Positions 3,918 through 59,731 of a stretch of 64,000 nt of DNA are shown piece by piece. The stretch's first letter is position 1. Each line of letters opens with the position of its first letter. This stretch comes from Botryllus schlosseri. Its lineage: Eukaryota. The notes below the pieces were generated by a model that saw only the letters and a program-made list of their open reading frames with translations, was not told where the DNA came from and made no database searches. Location: NCBI GenBank assembly GCA_051294905.1, contig CM119381.1, forward strand, positions 22,754,001 through 22,818,000. The letters run 5' to 3'. A program made the translations under genes and the position numbers.

Positions 3918-4930
3918 ATGCCCATGTCTGCTGCGAGCCACCAAGTGAAAAAAAAACAATTGACGAATTGTTAGTCGGAAGGTACTGCCAGTCATATTTG
4001 AAATTACGAATCAAGTCTGCACAGCAAGCTCATAATATGAGTCCAACGGCAGCGTTGTATTGATTAATAATTTCTCCACCGCCCGTAGTGCACACTCCTT
4101 AGCAACCCAAGGGTCATGTTAGTATAATGCGATTACGTCTCAAAAAACATCCACGACTGTGACTCACGCGGTTATGTTTGTTGGATTTCGCTCCGCGCCA
4201 TGAACGGATGACATTGGAATCCCCGGGGAGGAATGACGCATGCGTGTTGCTATTGGATACCGTTTTCGAGACTGGAAAGGCACCGAAAGAGCATACGAGG
4301 ACACGCGATTTATTGTTTTTCGAGTCTTAATCATATAATCAGGCCCGTCCGCATTGATTCATTATCAACAGGCTTGTTTTCAATCGTTGACTCGCGTTGT
4401 GGATGCATTGATCGTGTCTTAATTCCCATCAAGTACTCTGTCGCCACTTTAGAGTGCTTACCTGCTTACGAATGACGACGTTTCGCAGATCGACTGTGAC
4501 GTCAACGGCATTATCGCGATACAATGGAATCGGATATTCCCGGAAAAGGACAGTTCGCTTTTAAAAGTTACGATGACACGCCGATGCTTTTCGCGAAGTG
4601 GCGAAGCGATGAGTCATTATACTTGATCTTGTTGCGTGCCTTCGACGGGCGTGTCTCTCGGTAATAACACCGCTGTGTAGCGTCACATTTAGGCGTGTGT
4701 TTATAAGGATCGGAGTTTTATTATTGTCATATCGCGTGCGCCGATAAAAGCATCCCTGGCGCTCGTTAGGGTTTGGAAATGATGGAATAAATTTAAGATA
4801 CCGTCACGTGTTTGAGGTTTATTCTTCGCGATAAATCATGTAGTTGTAGTTACGCCTTGCTATCCAATTTCAGTCAGCTATGGTACACACGTCTATCTAC
4901 AAACAAAATATGCATGTTGAGTATTTGAAC

Positions 4931-5071
4931 AGCTTCTTTGAGGTACAGAACTTCAATATACAATTGAATAGTATATTCATATTAAAATGAACCCGAATAT
5001 TTTCGGCTGAGTGTCAGCCGAAAATATTCGGGTTCATTTTAATATGAATATACTATTCAATTGTATGTTGA
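4931..5071. repeat. Inverted pair of Penelope pseudo-LTR 3' ends
   Basis: Arms 4953-5010 and 5014-5071 around a gtg spacer. Confidence 0.85.
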
Positions 5072-15970: not shown

Positions 15971-16640
15971 TTGAAGAGCTTCTTGGAGATACTGAACTTC
16001 AATATACAATTGATTAGTTAGTATATTCATATTGAAATGAACTCGAATATTTTGGGCTGACACTGGTCAAGGGTAATCGTCAGCAACTAGTAGAGAATTG
16101 GAAAGAACATTGTATGTCAACAAAAGTATCGCAAAATATGACGTCACCGACATGAAATTTCGAACAATCTGGGCGGAGAGAGCGCTTAAGCTCAATGTAC
16201 TATTTTTAGATGGTACTCAAACTCCTTCTGAAGGCCCAGCTTGGTTGGCATATTTTGATAAAAGGCGACTGCAAGGCACCCAAACGAAAGTGTGAACGGC
16301 CTGTCCCGAAAACACGGTATCTGCCGTCCCGATATTTTTCGCGCAAACAGGATTATCGAACAAATGTTCGCGAATGGCAGAATTTATGACCTTTGCCTGT
16401 TGCGAATCAAGCTGCAGGGGATGAGTCAAGGGTGAGCCTTTCACCGAGCGTGATGTGCGTGTACTAATATATCTAGGTACATGCCGTTTTCCCCGGTCTC
16501 GCAAACGTTTCGTTTTTTTTATCTCACGTCGCCACAATCACAGTGGCGCTTATATTCATAAACTTGACTTTGTTGAAGTGTAAGAAGAACGTCTTTGCAT
16601 GTTGCATGGAGCACTGGTTATAATAACAAGATTTCGGGTA
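15971..16640 (-). mobile_element. Degenerate Penelope-like element: frameshifted GIY-YIG domain (16192-16640) plus pseudo-LTR
   Basis: Minus strand gives CKDVLLTLQQSQVYEYKRHCDC, RLRDRGKRHVPRYI, NSAIREHLFDNPVCAK and, after shifts, GRSHFRLGALQSPFIK...QKEFEYHLKIVH*, followed by the same repeat. Confidence 0.85.
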
Positions 16641-24166: not shown

Positions 24167-24507
24167 CGAAACCACCGTGTAAATTGATTGAATGGAATGT
24201 AGCTCTGCTCCCCCAATTTTTTTGTCCTGGATTCTGGCATTGCCCAAAATGATACGGGTCGAATGGCCCTCGTCTTCTGCACAAAATTATACGGTTCTGG
24301 ATATATCCTGACGTTCCAATAGAATCTATCTAATTCAAGCTGTGAGCACTTAGGTCAAGTGGTGTTTACGACAATATCTTCGCATTATGTGATAAAAATG
24401 TACACTGCACAGTTAAATATCCACTGGTTTTACAATGTATATTGTAGAGCTTCTTGGAGGTACAGATCTTCAATGTACAATTGAATAGTATATTCATATT
24501 GAAATGA

Positions 24508-24541
24508 ACCCGAATATTTTCGGCTGACACTCGTCAGGGGT
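24508..24541 (-). ncRNA. Minimal hammerhead ribozyme (family 1), left arm of an inverted pair
   Basis: Reverse complement of acccgaatattttcggctgacactcgtcaggggt has the intact core. Confidence 0.78.
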
Positions 24542-24582
24542 AATCGTCTTTTAAGAACATTCTCTACTAGTTGCCGACGATT

Positions 24583-24616
24583 ACCCCTGACGAGTGTCAG
24601 CCGAAAATATTCGGGT
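24583..24616 (+). ncRNA. Minimal hammerhead ribozyme (family 1), right arm of an inverted pair
   Basis: acccctgacgagtgtcagccgaaaatattcgggt. Confidence 0.78.
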
Positions 24617-25549
24617 TCATTTCAATATGAACATACTATTCAATGTACAATTGTACATTGTACATGCGAAAACTTTGATCAATGTTGACACCGGTTGTGT
24701 TGCTGCCTAACTTCCTTCGATTTACATCGAATTTGAGAGTATGATCGCTCCTAATGTCAAAGTATTTGGATACAATTCAAAAACCGATCGGTCGACATAT
24801 TTCGAATTTCGTCCGCTTCCGAGTGACAGAAAAAAAAGATGATTTGAGCGAAATTTTGGTTTCAGAGTTACCGAAATTTTCCGTTACGACCCCGCCTTTG
24901 ACACGCCTGCGTTAGGTGGATTGGAGATTTCAAGTCAAGATCGCTGTGGATTAGTCAACAGTTGTGGTGAAAATTCAGAGGTTTGGAAGCACTGTCGCCA
25001 AAATACGTGAATATATTAATATCCAAATCCTTATACACCTCTGCCGGAATAACACACGAATCTCATCTCTGCGAGTTCGCCTGTAGGCCCGTGTGGGTGA
25101 AGCCATGTCCCGAAGCCGGATGCCGAAAATCTGTTTGGCTTTCGGTCTGCGCGCTGTTTGCGGTACTTTTACATCGATCTATTCAGCTCTCCCACACATA
25201 AACCAGCGCAGTTTGCCCACCGTGCTATTGCAGTTCGTTACGGTGTCCTGCAAGGTCGCTTGTTAGCGCTTGTCAACATGTTTTTACATGCACGCCGGTA
25301 CTGACTCACAGGTGTAAACTCAAGATGTGGATCCGCTAAGCTAATTCGGTGTGTGCATGCGTGGTTGTGAACTTAGAACACATAAACAGTAAACAAGCCT
25401 CGGGATCTGAGGACTACAATGACGTCATTAATGGTTATTTTAGATGACACCAGAGCAAACGTGAATTTAACAGTATATATATAGGACGATTGCCATCAGT
25501 GACTGGCCTCTGGTATGAATGGTGGGGTAACTGCTCGGTGTGCGGGTAT

Positions 25550-42864: not shown

Positions 42865-44245
42865 GGTATAATTTGCCGATACGAATATACTTTTTTGTTG
42901 CAATATTGTAGTTTTGTACTTGTCTATTTAGAAGTAGTATTATATCAAAATCGTACAAGTATAGCGTACCGATTACGTATGGTGACTACTGACTATGATC
43001 AATGCGAACCGCGCGCACCGTAAACCAGCCTCAAAAGTCGTGTATCAATCTTCACGAGATGATTTAATCCGAATTGGTCATCGCGCGGACAGATGTCATA
43101 ACGTTTCGTTGCTTGCAAATCGGCCCATGTCGTCGCGCGTGTCATGAGACGATTCCGCGCGCGCACCGATTACTAATATCTCACTCTTGCGTTCGTGAAC
43201 TTATCCGACTCCTTGTCGTGAATTCTTGTTATGTTGCTTGGCGGAAAATGTACTAATTGCTCATCGCCGTGTACCTTGTTGACTCTCGTCGGCGATTATG
43301 ATTCATTATATTCGACTTGTCTTCGTCTTATTGCGCGCCGGATTGCGCAGATTTCGCGATCCAATCCGGCGGCTATCGGGCCGCTGGTAAATGATTGTTA
43401 TCAATGTAATTATTCAGTAAACTTTTTCTTGTGTACCGCGAATGCTTTTGACGGGGGTCTGCAACCGGGTGTAGACTGGTCAGTGGTCATACAGAAAACG
43501 CTAAATGCGGTTTCTGCAGTAAAAAATGGATTGGTCTTGCCTGCATTGCAGCAATTCATTTGATCATTTCATCATGATGTTTGCATTTGCGCCATGCACC
43601 TTCATTGGCTAGACCAGCACCATCAAGCTGGGGTCCGGGTACAGCAGTTTAAGTGAGTTCGCAATGAGATTTTTTTATGATTGTGATTCGATAATTAAGC
43701 TTTATCGGTTGTAATGATTTCTTTATTATGAGTCAAACCGAACATTGACGGCTCAATTGCAGCAATACCTGTGCACCCACCCCATAAAACGATTCTACGG
43801 GGCTGGTCAGTGGTCACACTTGATAGTTTTCGCATTTTTTTCACTGGCGTGGTGTTGGCGTTTTTCCTGTAGGAGTGTTTTTTGATTTTCATACGGCCGC
43901 GTAGTGTCAAAATAATTGCCAAAGATTTTAGGCAAGTTTGGCAATCAGTCTGCCTTGTAGTTAGTTAGCCAGTTGCATTGACTCAATTATTGTAATTTCT
44001 ACGCCAAATATACCATGGCGCCTTCCATTCATCGTGGCTACCCGATTCGGAATAGCAATAGTGGTTGAAAAACGCACAAAATTCGCGCATATCTGGCATA
44101 TACATCTCGCATGGTGTTGCAAAGTAAATGTTGAATTCATTTTAGCGTTATGTATGTCATGTATTATCGACTTGTATTCAACCCTGCATAATATTCAATA
44201 CATGTATTCACAAACTATCCAATTCTCTACCAGTTGCTGACGATT

Positions 44246-44279
44246 ACCCCTGACGAGTGTCAGCCGAAAATATTCGGGT
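44246..44279 (+). ncRNA. Minimal hammerhead ribozyme (family 1), intact, in pseudo-LTR copy 44213-44340
   Basis: Core identical to 59439-59472. Confidence 0.8.
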
Positions 44280-45809
44280 TTATTTCAATATGAATATACT
44301 ATTCAATTGTATATTGAAGTTCTGTACCTCCAATAAGCTCTTAACTATCTCGAGCGCACGATTGCTTTTACACCGATGAATATTTTAACCCGCTAAAAAC
44401 CGTCGATTATTCAGTTGCAATCGATGTTGCAATTTGAACGTCTTCGATTTGCCCCGTCTGCGATAAAAAACTTTCCGTAAAATCCCAGCCTCCGAGACGC
44501 TTACCCGAAACGAAATCATCGCTTGTCATTCCAAAATGGATTCCAGTCGCTCGCGTCATGATTATAAAAACGCGCACGCCTATTACGACACAATTCGTGC
44601 AATGTTGCGTTGCCTGCGACCACGCAATGCTCGTTACGATATAATGACTGCTCATGTCGAATGCAGTAGTTGAACCGATTGAAAAGAAAGTATTTATACG
44701 CGCGGGACACGACATATACAGTACACGCAACGAAACATGTTTTTAGTATCTCCCCGTGACTAAATCATGATGTTTTAGTTGGTCAGTGTATCGCGTCTCG
44801 TATTTTCTTCAGGGAACGCCAGGGACATTTCCAATTGCTAGTCGCTGTTTTTACGCTTTCGGTTGTAATACTTTACATATACATTTGCGTTGCATTTTTA
44901 CACTCAGTTGTGACGCAGCGTGAGTCCAACTGTTCTGCAATTTTAGTGACTGCAGCAGCGGTAAACATACCAATTTCGATGTTGCGCTGGCATTCGTCAT
45001 GTGTTGTGGTTTATTTTGTAACGCGTCCTTATTGCTCACGAATTGAGATAGTTTCGAATTGTGTTTATCGCTAGAGCCATTTCAAAGATGCTGACCAACG
45101 CTTATCGCAGAGCTCTATGGTTAAACTTTGAATGATGCGGTGACTTGGTGTGTCTAAAATGTGCCTTGTCGCGTCATTATAACAGTCAATGCCCTATCGG
45201 GTATGACTGCAGAATTGAAATTCTCATTCCGCGGACGTTATGTGAGTGACTGCTGTTTTAACTTTCGATATATGTCACCGTGCGGCAATAACAAACTTGT
45301 TGGTGCGGTAATGAAACCTCCTTCGTATAAGCCGTCTTCCTGCCCAAACGATTTGAAATATAAGATGGGCTTGACGAAAATGGGACCAAAATACGTTAAA
45401 TTGATTCATAAATTAATTGTACAAGTTAACATGGTACGTCCAACTCAATCTGGGTGTTAGGTTTCCAAAATTCCCATATAATGATGTCAAGTCCACACTA
45501 CTTGATATAAAACACATAAGGGAAAGAGTTGTCATCCATAATTTTTAGGAAGACCTGAAATCGCCACTCAGGTCTTCCTAAAAATGCAGGTTATCTGTTT
45601 CGTCGCTGTGCGCTCTCTTTGGAGTGGTCTTGTATTTCCCTTCCGACAACCCCGCACTGCGATCCGACTGGCAGAGATAAAGCACTGGTTTGGATGGATT
45701 CGAACATGAAATTTCAATTAATTTCGAAGTTTTATGGCACGTCTAAACGAATTTCAGTGTTTTTTCGGATATGGAATTGGCATAAGATACGGTACGAAGA
45801 CGAAGCGTA

Positions 45810-59082: not shown

Positions 59083-59497
59083 AACTCTCAGCGAAAAGAA
59101 TGTATTCACACTACAAAAGATGCTGATCGATCAAAGGCCATTAATTCTGCCATCGGCAAACATCTGTTGGATAATCCGATTTGTGCGAATAATTATCGAG
59201 ACGACCGATTTCGAATCGTAGGTCGAGGCCGTTCACAATTCCATTTGTGTGCCTTGGAATCAACTTTTATCAAAATACACCAACCAAAACTCTGTCAACA
59301 AAAGGAGTTCGTGTATCACCTAAAAATAATACACTGAACGCTCTCTCATTCGAAATTTCATGCTGGTGACGTCATATTTTGTGATACGATTGTTGATATA
59401 CAATGTTCTTTCCAATTCTCTTCTAGTTGCTGACGATTACCCCTGACGAGTGTCAGCCGAAAATATTCGGGTTCATTTCAATATGAATATACTATTT
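59083..59497 (+). mobile_element. 5'-truncated Penelope-like element: open GIY-YIG C-terminus (59083-59337) plus 3' pseudo-LTR with hammerhead, inside a TALPID3 intron
   Basis: ATG-less frame reads INSAIGKHLLDNPICANNYRDDRFRIVGRGRSQFHLCALESTFIKIHQPKLCQQKEFVYHLKIIH*, the typical PLE endonuclease end. It runs directly into the abundant repeat. Confidence 0.88.
59439..59472 (+). ncRNA. Minimal type-I hammerhead ribozyme (family 1), intact core; predicted cleavage after C59468
   Basis: ACCC-CUGACGA-G(UGUCAGC)C-GAAA-AUAU-UC-GGGU: full catalytic core, 4-bp stem I, 1-bp stem II, palindromic AAUAUU stem III. Confidence 0.8.
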
Positions 59498-59731
59498 AAC
59501 TACAAAAGGTGGTACTCGAAAACAGCCTACCACACCCCACGGGTGTGTATGATCAGAATCCACCCTAGCATATTGCGAAGATATTGTGATGTTAAATGGA
59601 GAATTAAGAATAGCAGTGCTTTCCCTTCGACAATTTAGTGTAGTTGAGTTCTGTTAGTGAAATATTCTCTGTAGATTTCTCTCTCTCTCTCCCCCACCGA
59701 ATGTTGCTTAGAATTCGGGACATATTTTCAG

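What the first reader, a model, noticed from the sequence alone, without database searches (positions are those of the whole stretch)
59428..59472. The dominant short repeat of the window is a mobile minimal hammerhead ribozyme
Seen: at least 15 dispersed pieces of one 100-280 bp repeat. In element sense the best four (24508-41 -, 24583-616 +, 44246-79 +, 59439-72 +) read ACCC CUGACGA G-UGUCAGC-C GAAA AUAU UC GGGU. That is the full hammerhead core with 4-bp stem I, 1-bp stem II and a self-complementary AAUAUU stem III. Established: Penelope-like elements carry minimal type-I hammerheads with palindromic stem III that are thought to work as dimers. Inference: this is a high-copy ribozyme-bearing family (about one piece per 4 kb), possibly retrozyme-like; I cannot tell whether it has been described for this species.
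Basis: partly seen in the sequence, partly recalled or inferred. Interest (0 to 1): 0.85.

Follow-up and report, generated by a model that had tools for sequence, protein, structure and literature searches.

The report
Penelope retrotransposon hammerhead with pseudoknot helix
The repeat is the tail end of dead copies of a Penelope-like retrotransposon, which carries the small hammerhead self-cleaving RNA motif already known for such elements; the unusual part is that one of the motif's three helices is made by pairing with a box just upstream instead of by a hairpin.

Summary
The 34-nt motif is at 59439-59472, three more perfect copies lie at the stated places, and about 20 pieces of the repeat occur in the window.

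Genome-wide, a hammerhead descriptor hits 8,445 times against 26 for a reversed control. The exact 44-mer occurs 2,539 times.

The pieces are 5'-truncated 3' ends of a Penelope-like element (PLE). A full copy (L031) has an 859-aa reverse-transcriptase ORF with a GIY-YIG-like C-terminus, the motif in both flanking repeats, head-to-head inverted partners and the PLE 'tail' signature. It is not a retrozyme.

'Loop II' (GUCAGC, 59452-59457) pairs with an upstream box (GCUGAC, 59429-59434). This 6-bp pseudoknot stacks on G10.1:C11.1 and serves as helix II.

- The pairing covaries across eight families or subfamilies in this genome and eight related PLE contigs from elsewhere.
- Every pseudoknot position shows at least three different standard base-pair types.
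- Stem I and the C3-G8 core pair (U3-A8 in three contigs) also covary.
- Loop III is always palindromic, as in dimer-type hammerheads.

Cleavage is not shown: Rfam gives no hit and RNA-seq shows no ends at the site.

The hammerhead-PLE link and pseudoknot hammerheads (PDB 8YDC) are each published. I did not find their combination in the papers I could read. This scan had already reached the same reading on other DNA of this genome.

The parts
59119..59499 (+). 5'-truncated dead copy (about 380 bp) of Penelope-like element family A. It holds the last ~70 codons of the ORF, the 3' UTR, the hammerhead motif and a 31-nt stretch after the cleavage site.
   Evidence: 98-99% identical to at least 40 genomic copies over 59130-59499. 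The alignment of L001 with L002 starts at L001:1490, which is window 59119. Homology to the tandem junction in L031 stops after ...TATACTATTTAA at 59499.
59335..59337 (+). Stop codon (TGA) of the truncated RT-endonuclease ORF (...KEFVYHLKIIH*).
   Evidence: Sequence compared with the translation of the full ORF.
59429..59434 (+). Upstream box GCUGAC: the 5' strand of the pseudoknot that serves as helix II (positions 10.2-10.7).
   Evidence: Complementary to 59452-59457. It covaries in families A-G of this genome and in 8 foreign PLE contigs.
59435..59438 (+). Linker GAUU between the box and stem I. The first G is conserved in 15 of 16 representatives.
59439..59442 (+). Stem I, 5' strand ACCC.
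   Evidence: Pairs with 59469-59472. Covaries between families: UCCC/GGGA, GCUA/UAGC, ACUG/CAGU, ACUC/GAGU.
59443..59449 (+). Core box C3 U4 G5 A6 C7 G8 A9.
   Evidence: The 3-8 pair is C-G in 12, U-A in 3 and U-G in 1 of 16 representatives.
59450..59451 (+). G10.1 (pairs with C11.1 at 59458), followed by one unpaired U that would cross the deep groove of the pseudoknot helix.
   Evidence: G10.1:C11.1 is present in all copies. The spacer is a single nucleotide in 14 of 16 representatives. Its groove path is inference from H-type pseudoknot geometry.
59452..59457 (+). GUCAGC: the 3' strand of pseudoknot helix II (11.7-11.2).
59458..59462 (+). C11.1, G12, A13, A14, A15.1.
   Evidence: invariant in alignment A1.
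59462..59467 (+). Self-complementary AAUAUU: A15.1, loop AUAU, U16.1. This is a dimer-type helix III.
   Evidence: Always palindromic across families and taxa: AAUAUU, AAGCUU, AACGUU, AGGCCU, AAAGCUUU.
59468..59469 (+). Predicted cleavage site, between C17 (59468) and G1.1 (59469).
   Evidence: Inferred from hammerhead numbering. Not shown experimentally; no RNA-seq ends at the equivalent site.
59469..59472 (+). Stem I, 3' strand GGGU.
59483..59485 (+). ATG that starts the element's ORF in full-length or tandem copies, 15 nt after the cleavage site. Here it is only a relic inside the 3' stretch.
   Evidence: In-frame M at residue 12 of the mechanical ORF in L031.
44215..44342 (+). Another family copy with a perfect motif (44246-44279). 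It extends about 72 nt past the cleavage site (long-tail class).
24442..24660 (.). Head-to-head inverted pair of copies, with perfect motifs at 24508-24541 (-) and 24583-24616 (+).
4917..5071 (.). Palindromic junction of two inverted tails, joined inside the motif (...CGGCTGA|GTGTCAGCCG...). The core is lost.
16019..16395 (-). Older copy, 79% identical over 379 bp, with a mutated core (UUGACCA).

Best explanation
The repeat is the 3' end (pseudo-LTR region) of a young, very abundant Penelope-like retrotransposon, and the copy at 59119-59499 is an inert 5'-truncated insertion.

The motif it carries folds as a type-I hammerhead with these parts:
- a stem I of 4 bp (up to 7 bp in sister families);
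- the full catalytic core;
- a helix II made of G10.1:C11.1 stacked on a 6-bp pseudoknot, formed between the strand just 5' of C11.1 and a box 13-16 nt upstream of C3;
- a helix III reduced to A15.1:U16.1 around a palindromic tetraloop, so that two copies must pair to build it.

Inferred mechanism. In read-through transcripts of tandem copies, or between two transcripts, two motifs dimerise through the palindrome. Each then cleaves after H17. This would release a unit-length RNA whose 5' end lies 15 nt before the ORF's AUG.

Shown here: the element's identity, and the base pairs by covariation. Not shown: dimerisation and cleavage.
For: Element identity:
[quoted passage not shown] The motif sits in both flanking repeats.
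- 656 homologues share one domain architecture.
- 5' ends are progressively truncated and head-to-head inverted partners are frequent.
- There are two classes of 3' end, about +31 and +72 nt after the cleavage site. This matches the PLE 'tail' described in PMC11167929 and PMC8557442.

Abundance: 8,445 descriptor hits against 26 for the control; 2,539 exact 44-mers against 0.

Structure:
- On 53 distinct copies, 86% of cells are paired, against 23-44% when the partners are slid.
- The covariation score beats all 500 shuffles.
- 4 of 6 pseudoknot pairs and 6 of 7 stem I pairs change on both sides.
- Across 16 family or taxon representatives, every pseudoknot position shows at least 3 standard pair types.
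- Spacing is constant: the box starts 13-16 nt before C3, with 1 nt after G10.1 and 0 nt before C11.1.
- 8 of 9 foreign PLE contigs (RT 40-64% identical) carry the same architecture with unrelated pseudoknot sequences, just 5' of the ORF start.
- The 3-8 core pair switches C-G to U-A in three of them. That switch is a hammerhead-specific tertiary pair, already reported in PLE hammerheads (PMC4209133).

Precedent: a solved pseudoknot hammerhead has this connectivity, a 6-bp PK replacing helix II and closed by G10.1:C11.1 (PMC11300833, PDB 8YDC).
Against: - No Rfam hammerhead model matches, even at E<=10 on 301 bases.
- Bulk RNA-seq shows no pile-up of read starts or ends at the predicted site. 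The ORF body is almost unexpressed in the sample read. 96% of reads over the motif run into unrelated flanks, so they come from passive transcription of dispersed relics.
- The nested minimum-energy fold of a monomer is not the hammerhead. A competing hairpin (core CUGAC with GUCAG, -5.4 kcal/mol) exists.
- The AAUAUU dimer duplex of family A is very weak (-0.2 kcal/mol).
- Published PLE minimal hammerheads cleave poorly in vitro (PMC4209133). Hammerhead mutants did not affect insertion of an Anolis PLE in vitro (PMC11167929).
- The representatives were found with a regular expression that demands the core, so conservation of the core is partly circular. The pseudoknot, stem I and the 3-8 covariation are not.
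Confidence: 0.8

Rival explanations
1. The conserved fold is real, but it serves mainly as a recognition or positioning element for the PLE protein (RT initiation, RNP assembly or translation start). Self-cleavage would be vestigial or absent.
For: No RNA ends at the predicted site. In the Anolis PLE, catalytic mutants of the hammerhead did not change insertion in vitro and no RNA-seq ends were seen at the site (PMC11167929). In vitro activity of PLE minimal hammerheads is low (PMC4209133). The motif sits 15 nt before the AUG and next to the RT start or 'tail' region.
Against: All catalytic core positions are kept across PLEs whose RTs are only 40-64% identical. H17 is never G. The C3-G8 pair covaries to U3-A8, which is what the active-site geometry demands. 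The two roles are not exclusive.
Confidence: 0.15
2. One reading: a hammerhead with a 1-bp stem II and an unstructured 7-nt loop, the upstream complementarity being a by-product of a duplicated CUGACGA box.
For: The upstream box GCUGACGA resembles the core CUGACGA in family A. The loop can also pair with the core itself, with 84% of cells paired.
Against: When the loop sequence changes, the compensating change is in the upstream box and not in the invariant core. The core:loop hairpin has 0 two-sided changes, and every shuffle equals or exceeds its counts of such changes. In foreign PLEs the box (UCAAGG, CUCAGU, CUCCAU, UGACGC) no longer resembles the core, yet stays complementary to the loop.
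Confidence: 0.03
3. It is a non-autonomous retrozyme or SINE-like family that spreads as small circular RNAs.
For: Most copies are short (100-380 bp), and hammerhead-bearing retrozymes are thought to derive from PLE pseudo-LTRs (preprint 10.64898/2026.07.22.740005).
Against: There are no tandem arrays in the window. The short pieces are colinear with the 3' end of the autonomous element and form a continuous series of 5' truncations up to full length. The tandem periods seen are full-length units, 2,778 bp in family B.
Confidence: 0.02

Closest known systems
Minimal hammerheads of Penelope-like elements (Cervera & de la Pena 2014, PMC4209133; Lunse, Weinberg & Breaker 2017, not readable here)
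   Same: Located in both pseudo-LTRs of a PLE. Type I with a short open stem I, conserved G10.1-C11.1 and a palindromic, minimal helix III implying dimers. U3-A8 core variants occur, and there are thousands of dispersed copies per genome.
   Different: The published consensus has a hairpin helix II of 6-8 bp and an unpaired nucleotide between A9 and 10.1. Here there is no hairpin: the 5' strand of helix II lies upstream of stem I (pseudoknot), and the unpaired nucleotide follows G10.1.
Pseudoknot-containing hammerhead (found by Weinberg et al. 2015 according to Zhan et al. 2024, PMC11300833; crystal structure PDB 8YDC)
   Same: Helix II is replaced by a 6-bp pseudoknot between a loop closed by G10.1:C11.1 and a segment 5' of helix I. 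The order of strands along the chain is the same.
   Different: In 8YDC the 5' strand sits in the loop of a 5-bp stem-loop (helix IV), braced by an A-rich linker, and helix III is a normal stable helix. Here no conserved helix IV is seen, the linker is 7-10 nt including stem I, and helix III is the dimer type. The host is an animal retrotransposon.
Non-circularly permuted hammerheads, types SGC, CSG and GCS (Eckert & Weinberg 2023, PMC10085705)
   Same: Natural hammerheads whose helices are built from strands in an unconventional 5'-to-3' order, creating pseudoknots. A short linker joins one side of stem I to one side of stem II.
   Different: Those keep 'block C' (stem I strand, CUGAnGA, stem II strand) intact and permute whole blocks. 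Here block C itself is split: only the stem II 5' strand, beyond 10.1, is moved.
Canonical C-terminal-endonuclease PLEs such as Penelope/Poseidon (PMC8557442, PMC11167929)
   Same: [quoted passage not shown]
   Different: The clade was not assigned here. Pfam GIY-YIG did not reach threshold for this ORF.

Membership tests
Hammerhead ribozyme (type I) | Core nucleotides C3 U4 G5 A6 N7 G8 A9 ... G12 A13 A14, A15.1-U16.1, H17 not G | tested here: met
   All are present at 59443-59468. They are kept in families A-G and in 8 foreign PLE contigs.
Hammerhead ribozyme (type I) | C3-G8 tertiary pair, seen as covariation | tested here: met
   C-G in 12, U-A in 3 and U-G in 1 of 16 representatives.
Hammerhead ribozyme (type I) | Stem I supported by covariation | tested here: met
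   6 of 7 pairs change on both sides; the inner 4 pairs are 87-96% paired.
Hammerhead ribozyme (type I) | Helix II adjoining A9 and G12 | tested here: met
   G10.1:C11.1 plus a covarying 6-bp helix is present, but it forms as a pseudoknot and not a hairpin.
Hammerhead ribozyme (type I) | Match to curated covariance models (Rfam Hammerhead_1, _3, _II, HH9, HH10) | tested here: not met
   No hit at gathering score on the window, nor at E<=10 on 59300-59600. This is expected, because the models require a hairpin stem II and a stem III.
Hammerhead ribozyme (type I) | Site-specific self-cleavage leaving 2',3'-cyclic phosphate and 5'-OH | tested here: inconclusive
   The RNA-seq layout shows no ends at the site, but the element is barely expressed and the library is not end-specific.
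PLE minimal hammerhead (Cervera & de la Pena 2014) | Located in the pseudo-LTRs of a Penelope-like element | tested here: met
   The motif is at both ends of the full copy in L031. It is in the same position in foreign PLE contigs.
PLE minimal hammerhead (Cervera & de la Pena 2014) | Palindromic 15.x-16.x / loop 3 (dimer-type helix III) | tested here: met
   AAUAUU, AAGCUU, AACGUU, AGGCCU and AAAGCUUU.
PLE minimal hammerhead (Cervera & de la Pena 2014) | Hairpin helix II of about 6-8 bp with an unpaired nucleotide between 9 and 10.1 | tested here: not met
   Only 7-8 nt lie between G10.1 and C11.1. They pair with the upstream box, and no nucleotide lies between A9 and G10.1.
Pseudoknot hammerhead (PDB 8YDC type) | 6-bp pseudoknot replacing helix II, loop closed by G10.1:C11.1, partner strand 5' of helix I | tested here: met
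   compared with the description in PMC11300833.
Pseudoknot hammerhead (PDB 8YDC type) | Partner strand presented in the loop of a stem-loop (helix IV) with an A-rich linker | tested here: not met
   Flanks of the box can form 3-5 weak pairs in families A and C, but not in B, E, L092, L095 or L100. There is no covariation (inspection).
Penelope-like element | Single ORF with reverse transcriptase | tested here: met
   RVT_1 at E 7.8e-9, with the YVDD motif.
Penelope-like element | GIY-YIG endonuclease domain | tested here: inconclusive
   A C-terminal block (VVYEY..CGYVGRTSRRL) is visible by eye. Pfam PF01541 is below threshold for this ORF and only present or faint in some homologues.
Penelope-like element | Partial-tandem pseudo-LTRs, inverted 5'-truncated partners, 30-40-bp tail | tested here: met
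   Tandem junction in L031. Inverted pairs. Two 3'-end classes about 40 nt apart.
Non-LTR retrozyme | Head-to-tail arrays of 150-300-bp units bounded by hammerheads | tested here: not met
   No such array in the window. The copies are 5'-truncated PLE ends.

The most novel reading that the evidence does not exclude
A whole clade of Penelope-like elements, abundant in this animal genome and in marine metagenomes, uses a hammerhead topology not yet described for retrotransposons. The 5' strand of helix II is displaced upstream of stem I, forming a pseudoknot that splits 'block C' of the hammerhead. This is combined with a helix III that exists only in dimers. It would be a natural eukaryotic counterpart of the crystallised PK hammerhead. 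It would also explain why descriptor and Rfam searches miss these elements, and possibly the 'HHR_core only' cases noted in PMC8557442.
Probability: 0.4. Interest if true: 0.62.

Novelty: new variant of a known kind. Interest (0 to 1): 0.5.

Why it matters
- Hammerheads in Penelope-like elements are known, so the finding as written is mostly a confirmation.
- What is worth keeping is the architecture. Thousands of copies here, and related elements from other organisms, build helix II as a pseudoknot, so standard hammerhead descriptors and Rfam models do not see them.
- Surveys that report PLE clades 'without canonical hammerheads' may therefore undercount.
- The pseudoknot form was reported to be more active than other hammerheads in vitro (PMC11300833). 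This clade would be a good test case for whether PLE hammerheads really cleave in vivo, and for whether they need to dimerise.

Tried and rejected
- **Rfam:** no hammerhead hit at gathering score or at E<=10. The only hit was a chance snoRNA match at E 4.3.
- **RNA evidence:** one bulk and one single-cell raw-read run plus two contig runs were laid on a tandem junction. There was no pile-up of ends at the cleavage site. Coverage is mainly passive, in both orientations, from dispersed relics. This counts as no support, not as evidence against.
- **Core:loop hairpin (CUGAC/GUCAG) as the conserved structure:** rejected, with no two-sided changes.
- **Upstream CUGACGA as the true core, with the downstream hairpin as helix II:** rejected by inspection. 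Six and two unpaired nucleotides would separate the helix from A9 and G12, and no stem I is available.
- **MITE or foldback DNA transposon, suggested by the palindromes at 4917-5071 and 24442-24660:** rejected. These are head-to-head PLE insertions, and the family has an RT ORF and 5' truncations.
- **Retrozyme:** rejected.
- **Conserved helix IV around the box:** not found.
- **L096:** this foreign PLE contig gave no motif with my relaxed expression.
- **Papers not held:** Lunse et al. 2017 (PMC5785218) and Weinberg et al. 2015 (PMC4509812). I therefore cannot exclude that this variant is drawn there.
- **Organism:** not identified, because run labels are coded.
- **Fetch error:** one region (L048) was fetched at mistyped coordinates and was not used.

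Full report
**1. Observation**

The stated sequence is there. Positions 59439-59472 (+) read ACCC CTGACGA G TGTCAGC C GAAA ATAT T C GGGT.

The same 34-mer occurs at 24508-24541 (-), 24583-24616 (+) and 44246-44279 (+).

The 20-nt core has 11 hits at up to 3 mismatches, against none in 100 shuffles. blastn with four copies finds about 20 pieces of 30-380 bp in the window.

The window is G000:C11:22754001-22818000 of a 495.5-Mb assembly. Genome-wide counts are:
- descriptor CTGANGAG-N5-9-CGAAA-N4-TH: 8,445 matches, against 26 for the reversed pattern;
- the subset with loop III = AGCT: 1,103 against 0;
- the exact 44-mer from the upstream box to stem I: 2,539 against 0.

The window holds five descriptor matches in 64 kb, about 4.6 times the genome average.

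**2. What the repeat is**

The 40 best genomic matches to 59130-59530 are 98-99% identical over 59130-59499. Many lie in head-to-head inverted pairs.

Comparing 30 loci shows a common 3' end and a continuous series of 5' truncations.

A 9.9-kb stretch (L031) holds full copies. It has an 859-aa ORF with RVT_1 (E 7.8e-9), YVDD and a C-terminal VVYEY..CGYVGRTSRRL block. The 20-mer core sits at both ends (L031 902-921 and 3594-3613, minus strand). A partial upstream copy forms the pseudo-LTR.

The ORF has 656 homologues with one shared domain set.

Solo copies end either about 31 nt after the predicted cleavage site (59499 in the window) or about 72 nt after it. This is the 30-40-bp 'tail' signature of Penelope-like elements. 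It has been tied to two internal RT start sites (PMC11167929) and is described for PLE insertions in PMC8557442.

The ORF's ATG lies 15 nt after the cleavage site (59483-59485 in the window copy).

The finding is therefore a 5'-truncated, dead Penelope-like insertion at 59119-59499. No tandem arrays exist in the window, so the retrozyme reading is not supported.

**3. The structure**

The core is complete: C3-A9 at 59443-59449, G12-A14 at 59459-59461, A15.1 at 59462, U16.1 at 59467 and C17 at 59468.

Published PLE minimal hammerheads have a hairpin helix II of 6-8 bp (PMC4209133).

The six nucleotides before C11.1 (GUCAGC, 59452-59457) are complementary to a box at 59429-59434 (GCUGAC).

I selected copies by their loop sequence only. 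I fetched 60 regions; one (L048) was mistyped and was not used. I then read the flanks. The families, written as box: strand, are:

| Family | Box : strand |
|---|---|
| A and C | GCUGAC : GUCAGC |
| B | ACUAAC : GUUAGU |
| B2 and G | ACUGAC : GUCAGU |
| E | ACUGGC : GCCAGU |
| E2 | UCUGGC : GCCAGA |
| D | GCCGAC : GUUGGC |

Stem I changes in step: ACCC/GGGU, UCCC/GGGA, GCUA/UAGC, ACUG/CAGU, ACUC/GAGU.

On 53 distinct copies (alignment A1; rows with a non-homologous upstream flank were left out), one search gave:
- the pseudoknot helix is 89.6% paired, with two-sided changes at 4 of 6 pairs;
- the whole structure is 86% paired, against 23-44% when the partners are slid;
- no shuffle out of 500 reaches the observed covariation score.

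The rival hairpin between the invariant core CUGAN and the loop shows no two-sided change, and its counts of such changes are equalled or exceeded by every shuffle.

These copies are related, so I count events per family: at least five independent compensatory events.

**4. Other organisms**

I fetched nine contigs that encode homologues of the ORF at 40-64% identity. Most come from marine metagenomes and one from a genome assembly.

Eight of them carry the same architecture just 5' of the ORF start, some twice in tandem. Their pseudoknot sequences are unrelated:

| Contig | Box : strand |
|---|---|
| L092 | UCUGAC : GUCAGA |
| L093 | UCUAGC : GCUAGA |
| L094 | UCAAGG : CCUUGA |
| L095 | CUCAGU : ACUGAG |
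| L097 | CGUGC : GCACG |
| L098 | UACAGC : GCUGUA |
| L099 | CUCCAU : AUGGAG |
| L100 | UGACGC : GCGUCA |

L096 gave no match.

Over the 16 representatives:
- every pseudoknot position shows at least three standard pair types;
- the box starts 13-16 nt before C3;
- one nucleotide (once 0, once 2) follows G10.1, and none (once 1) precedes C11.1;
- a G follows the box in 15 of 16.

Three contigs have U3-A8 and one has U3-G8 in place of C3-G8. That switch is predicted by the hammerhead active site and has been reported before in PLE hammerheads (PMC4209133).

Loop III is palindromic in all of them.

**5. How it would work**

Shown: the element's identity and the base pairs.

Inferred:
- The 6-bp helix stacks on G10.1:C11.1 and plays the part of helix II.
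- The single nucleotide after G10.1 crosses the deep groove, as loop 1 does in an H-type pseudoknot.
- The 7-10 nt between the box and C3 carry the 5' strand of stem I back towards the core, alongside helix II.

This is the connectivity of the crystallised pseudoknot hammerhead. There, a 6-bp PK replaces helix II and is closed by G10.1:C11.1 (PMC11300833, PDB 8YDC). Here, however, no conserved helix IV stem-loop presents the upstream strand.

Helix III can only be built between two copies (AAUAUU, AAGCUU and so on), as proposed for PLE hammerheads (PMC4209133, PMC6765202). Cleavage after C17 would give a unit-length RNA starting 15 nt before the AUG.

**6. Evidence that does not help**

- Rfam gives no hammerhead match.
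- In a bulk RNA-seq run the ORF body has depth 0-3. The pseudo-LTR region has depth of about 190 in both orientations.
- 96% of those reads continue into unrelated flanks, and no place shows an excess of read starts or ends.
- So the RNA seen is passive transcription of relics, and cleavage is neither shown nor excluded.
- The nested minimum-energy fold of a monomer is not the hammerhead. The competitor hairpin is worth -5.4 kcal/mol, against -8.1 for the pseudoknot duplex.
- The family A dimer duplex is worth only -0.2 kcal/mol.

**7. Novelty**

The link between hammerheads and PLEs, and their dimer-type helix III, is published. Pseudoknot hammerheads are published too. So are non-circular permutations, which keep the stem I strand, CUGAnGA and the stem II strand contiguous (PMC10085705).

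I found no paper among those searchable that describes a pseudoknotted helix II in PLE hammerheads. Two key papers could not be read.

This scan's earlier follow-ups on other pieces of the same genome (s1-231978, s1-229058) reached the same reading. First-stage notes (s1-300840, s1-270895) reported the covarying families. I re-derived both points independently here and extended them to other organisms.

Noticed in passing
window 59499 versus 44342, 15974, 24442; L031 3555-3557 and 3512-3522: Insertions of the family end at two alternative points, about 31 nt and about 72 nt after the predicted cleavage site. This ~40-nt 'tail' is the start of the element's own ORF, as expected if reverse transcription starts at two internal sites.
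   Followed up: partly
L031 3606-3560 (minus strand); window 59483-59485: The element's ORF start (ATG) lies 15 nt downstream of the hammerhead cleavage site. A mechanical ORF even reads through the ribozyme from a GTG inside loop II. In 8 foreign PLE contigs the motif is likewise just 5' of the ORF start.
   Followed up: partly
L092 62-68, L094 1156-1162 and 3997-4003, L099 464-470; L095 617-623: Related elements from marine metagenomes have core variants: U3-A8 (UUGAUAA, UUGAAAA) or U3-G8 (UUGAAGA) in place of C3-G8.
   Followed up: partly
window 59435 and the equivalent position in 15 of 16 representatives: A G immediately 3' of the pseudoknot box is nearly invariant. It might cap the helix opposite the unpaired nucleotide after G10.1, as the non-canonical end pairs do in 8YDC.
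   Followed up: no
window 4917-5071: Two inverted tails are fused inside the motif itself (...TTTTCGGCTGA|GTGTCAGCCGAAAA...). The result is a near-perfect 150-bp palindrome without a core.
   Followed up: no
G000:C1:22034530, 22037308, 22040086 and G000:C2:4939687, 4942465: Family B motifs recur on the same strand with a period of exactly 2,778 bp. These look like head-to-tail arrays of full-length units.
   Followed up: no
families B and E (for example L032, L076): In these families stem I can extend to 7 bp (UUCGCUA/UAGCGAA, UUCACUG/CAGUGGA). That leaves a single G between the pseudoknot box and stem I, a very tight connection if all pairs form at once.
   Followed up: no
L096 (whole contig): This contig encodes a PLE ORF 50% identical to the query, but my relaxed hammerhead expression finds nothing on it. 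It may have a further variant or an incomplete flank.
   Followed up: no
window, whole: Descriptor-matching motifs are about 4.6 times denser here (5 in 64 kb) than the genome average (8,445 in 495.5 Mb).
   Followed up: no
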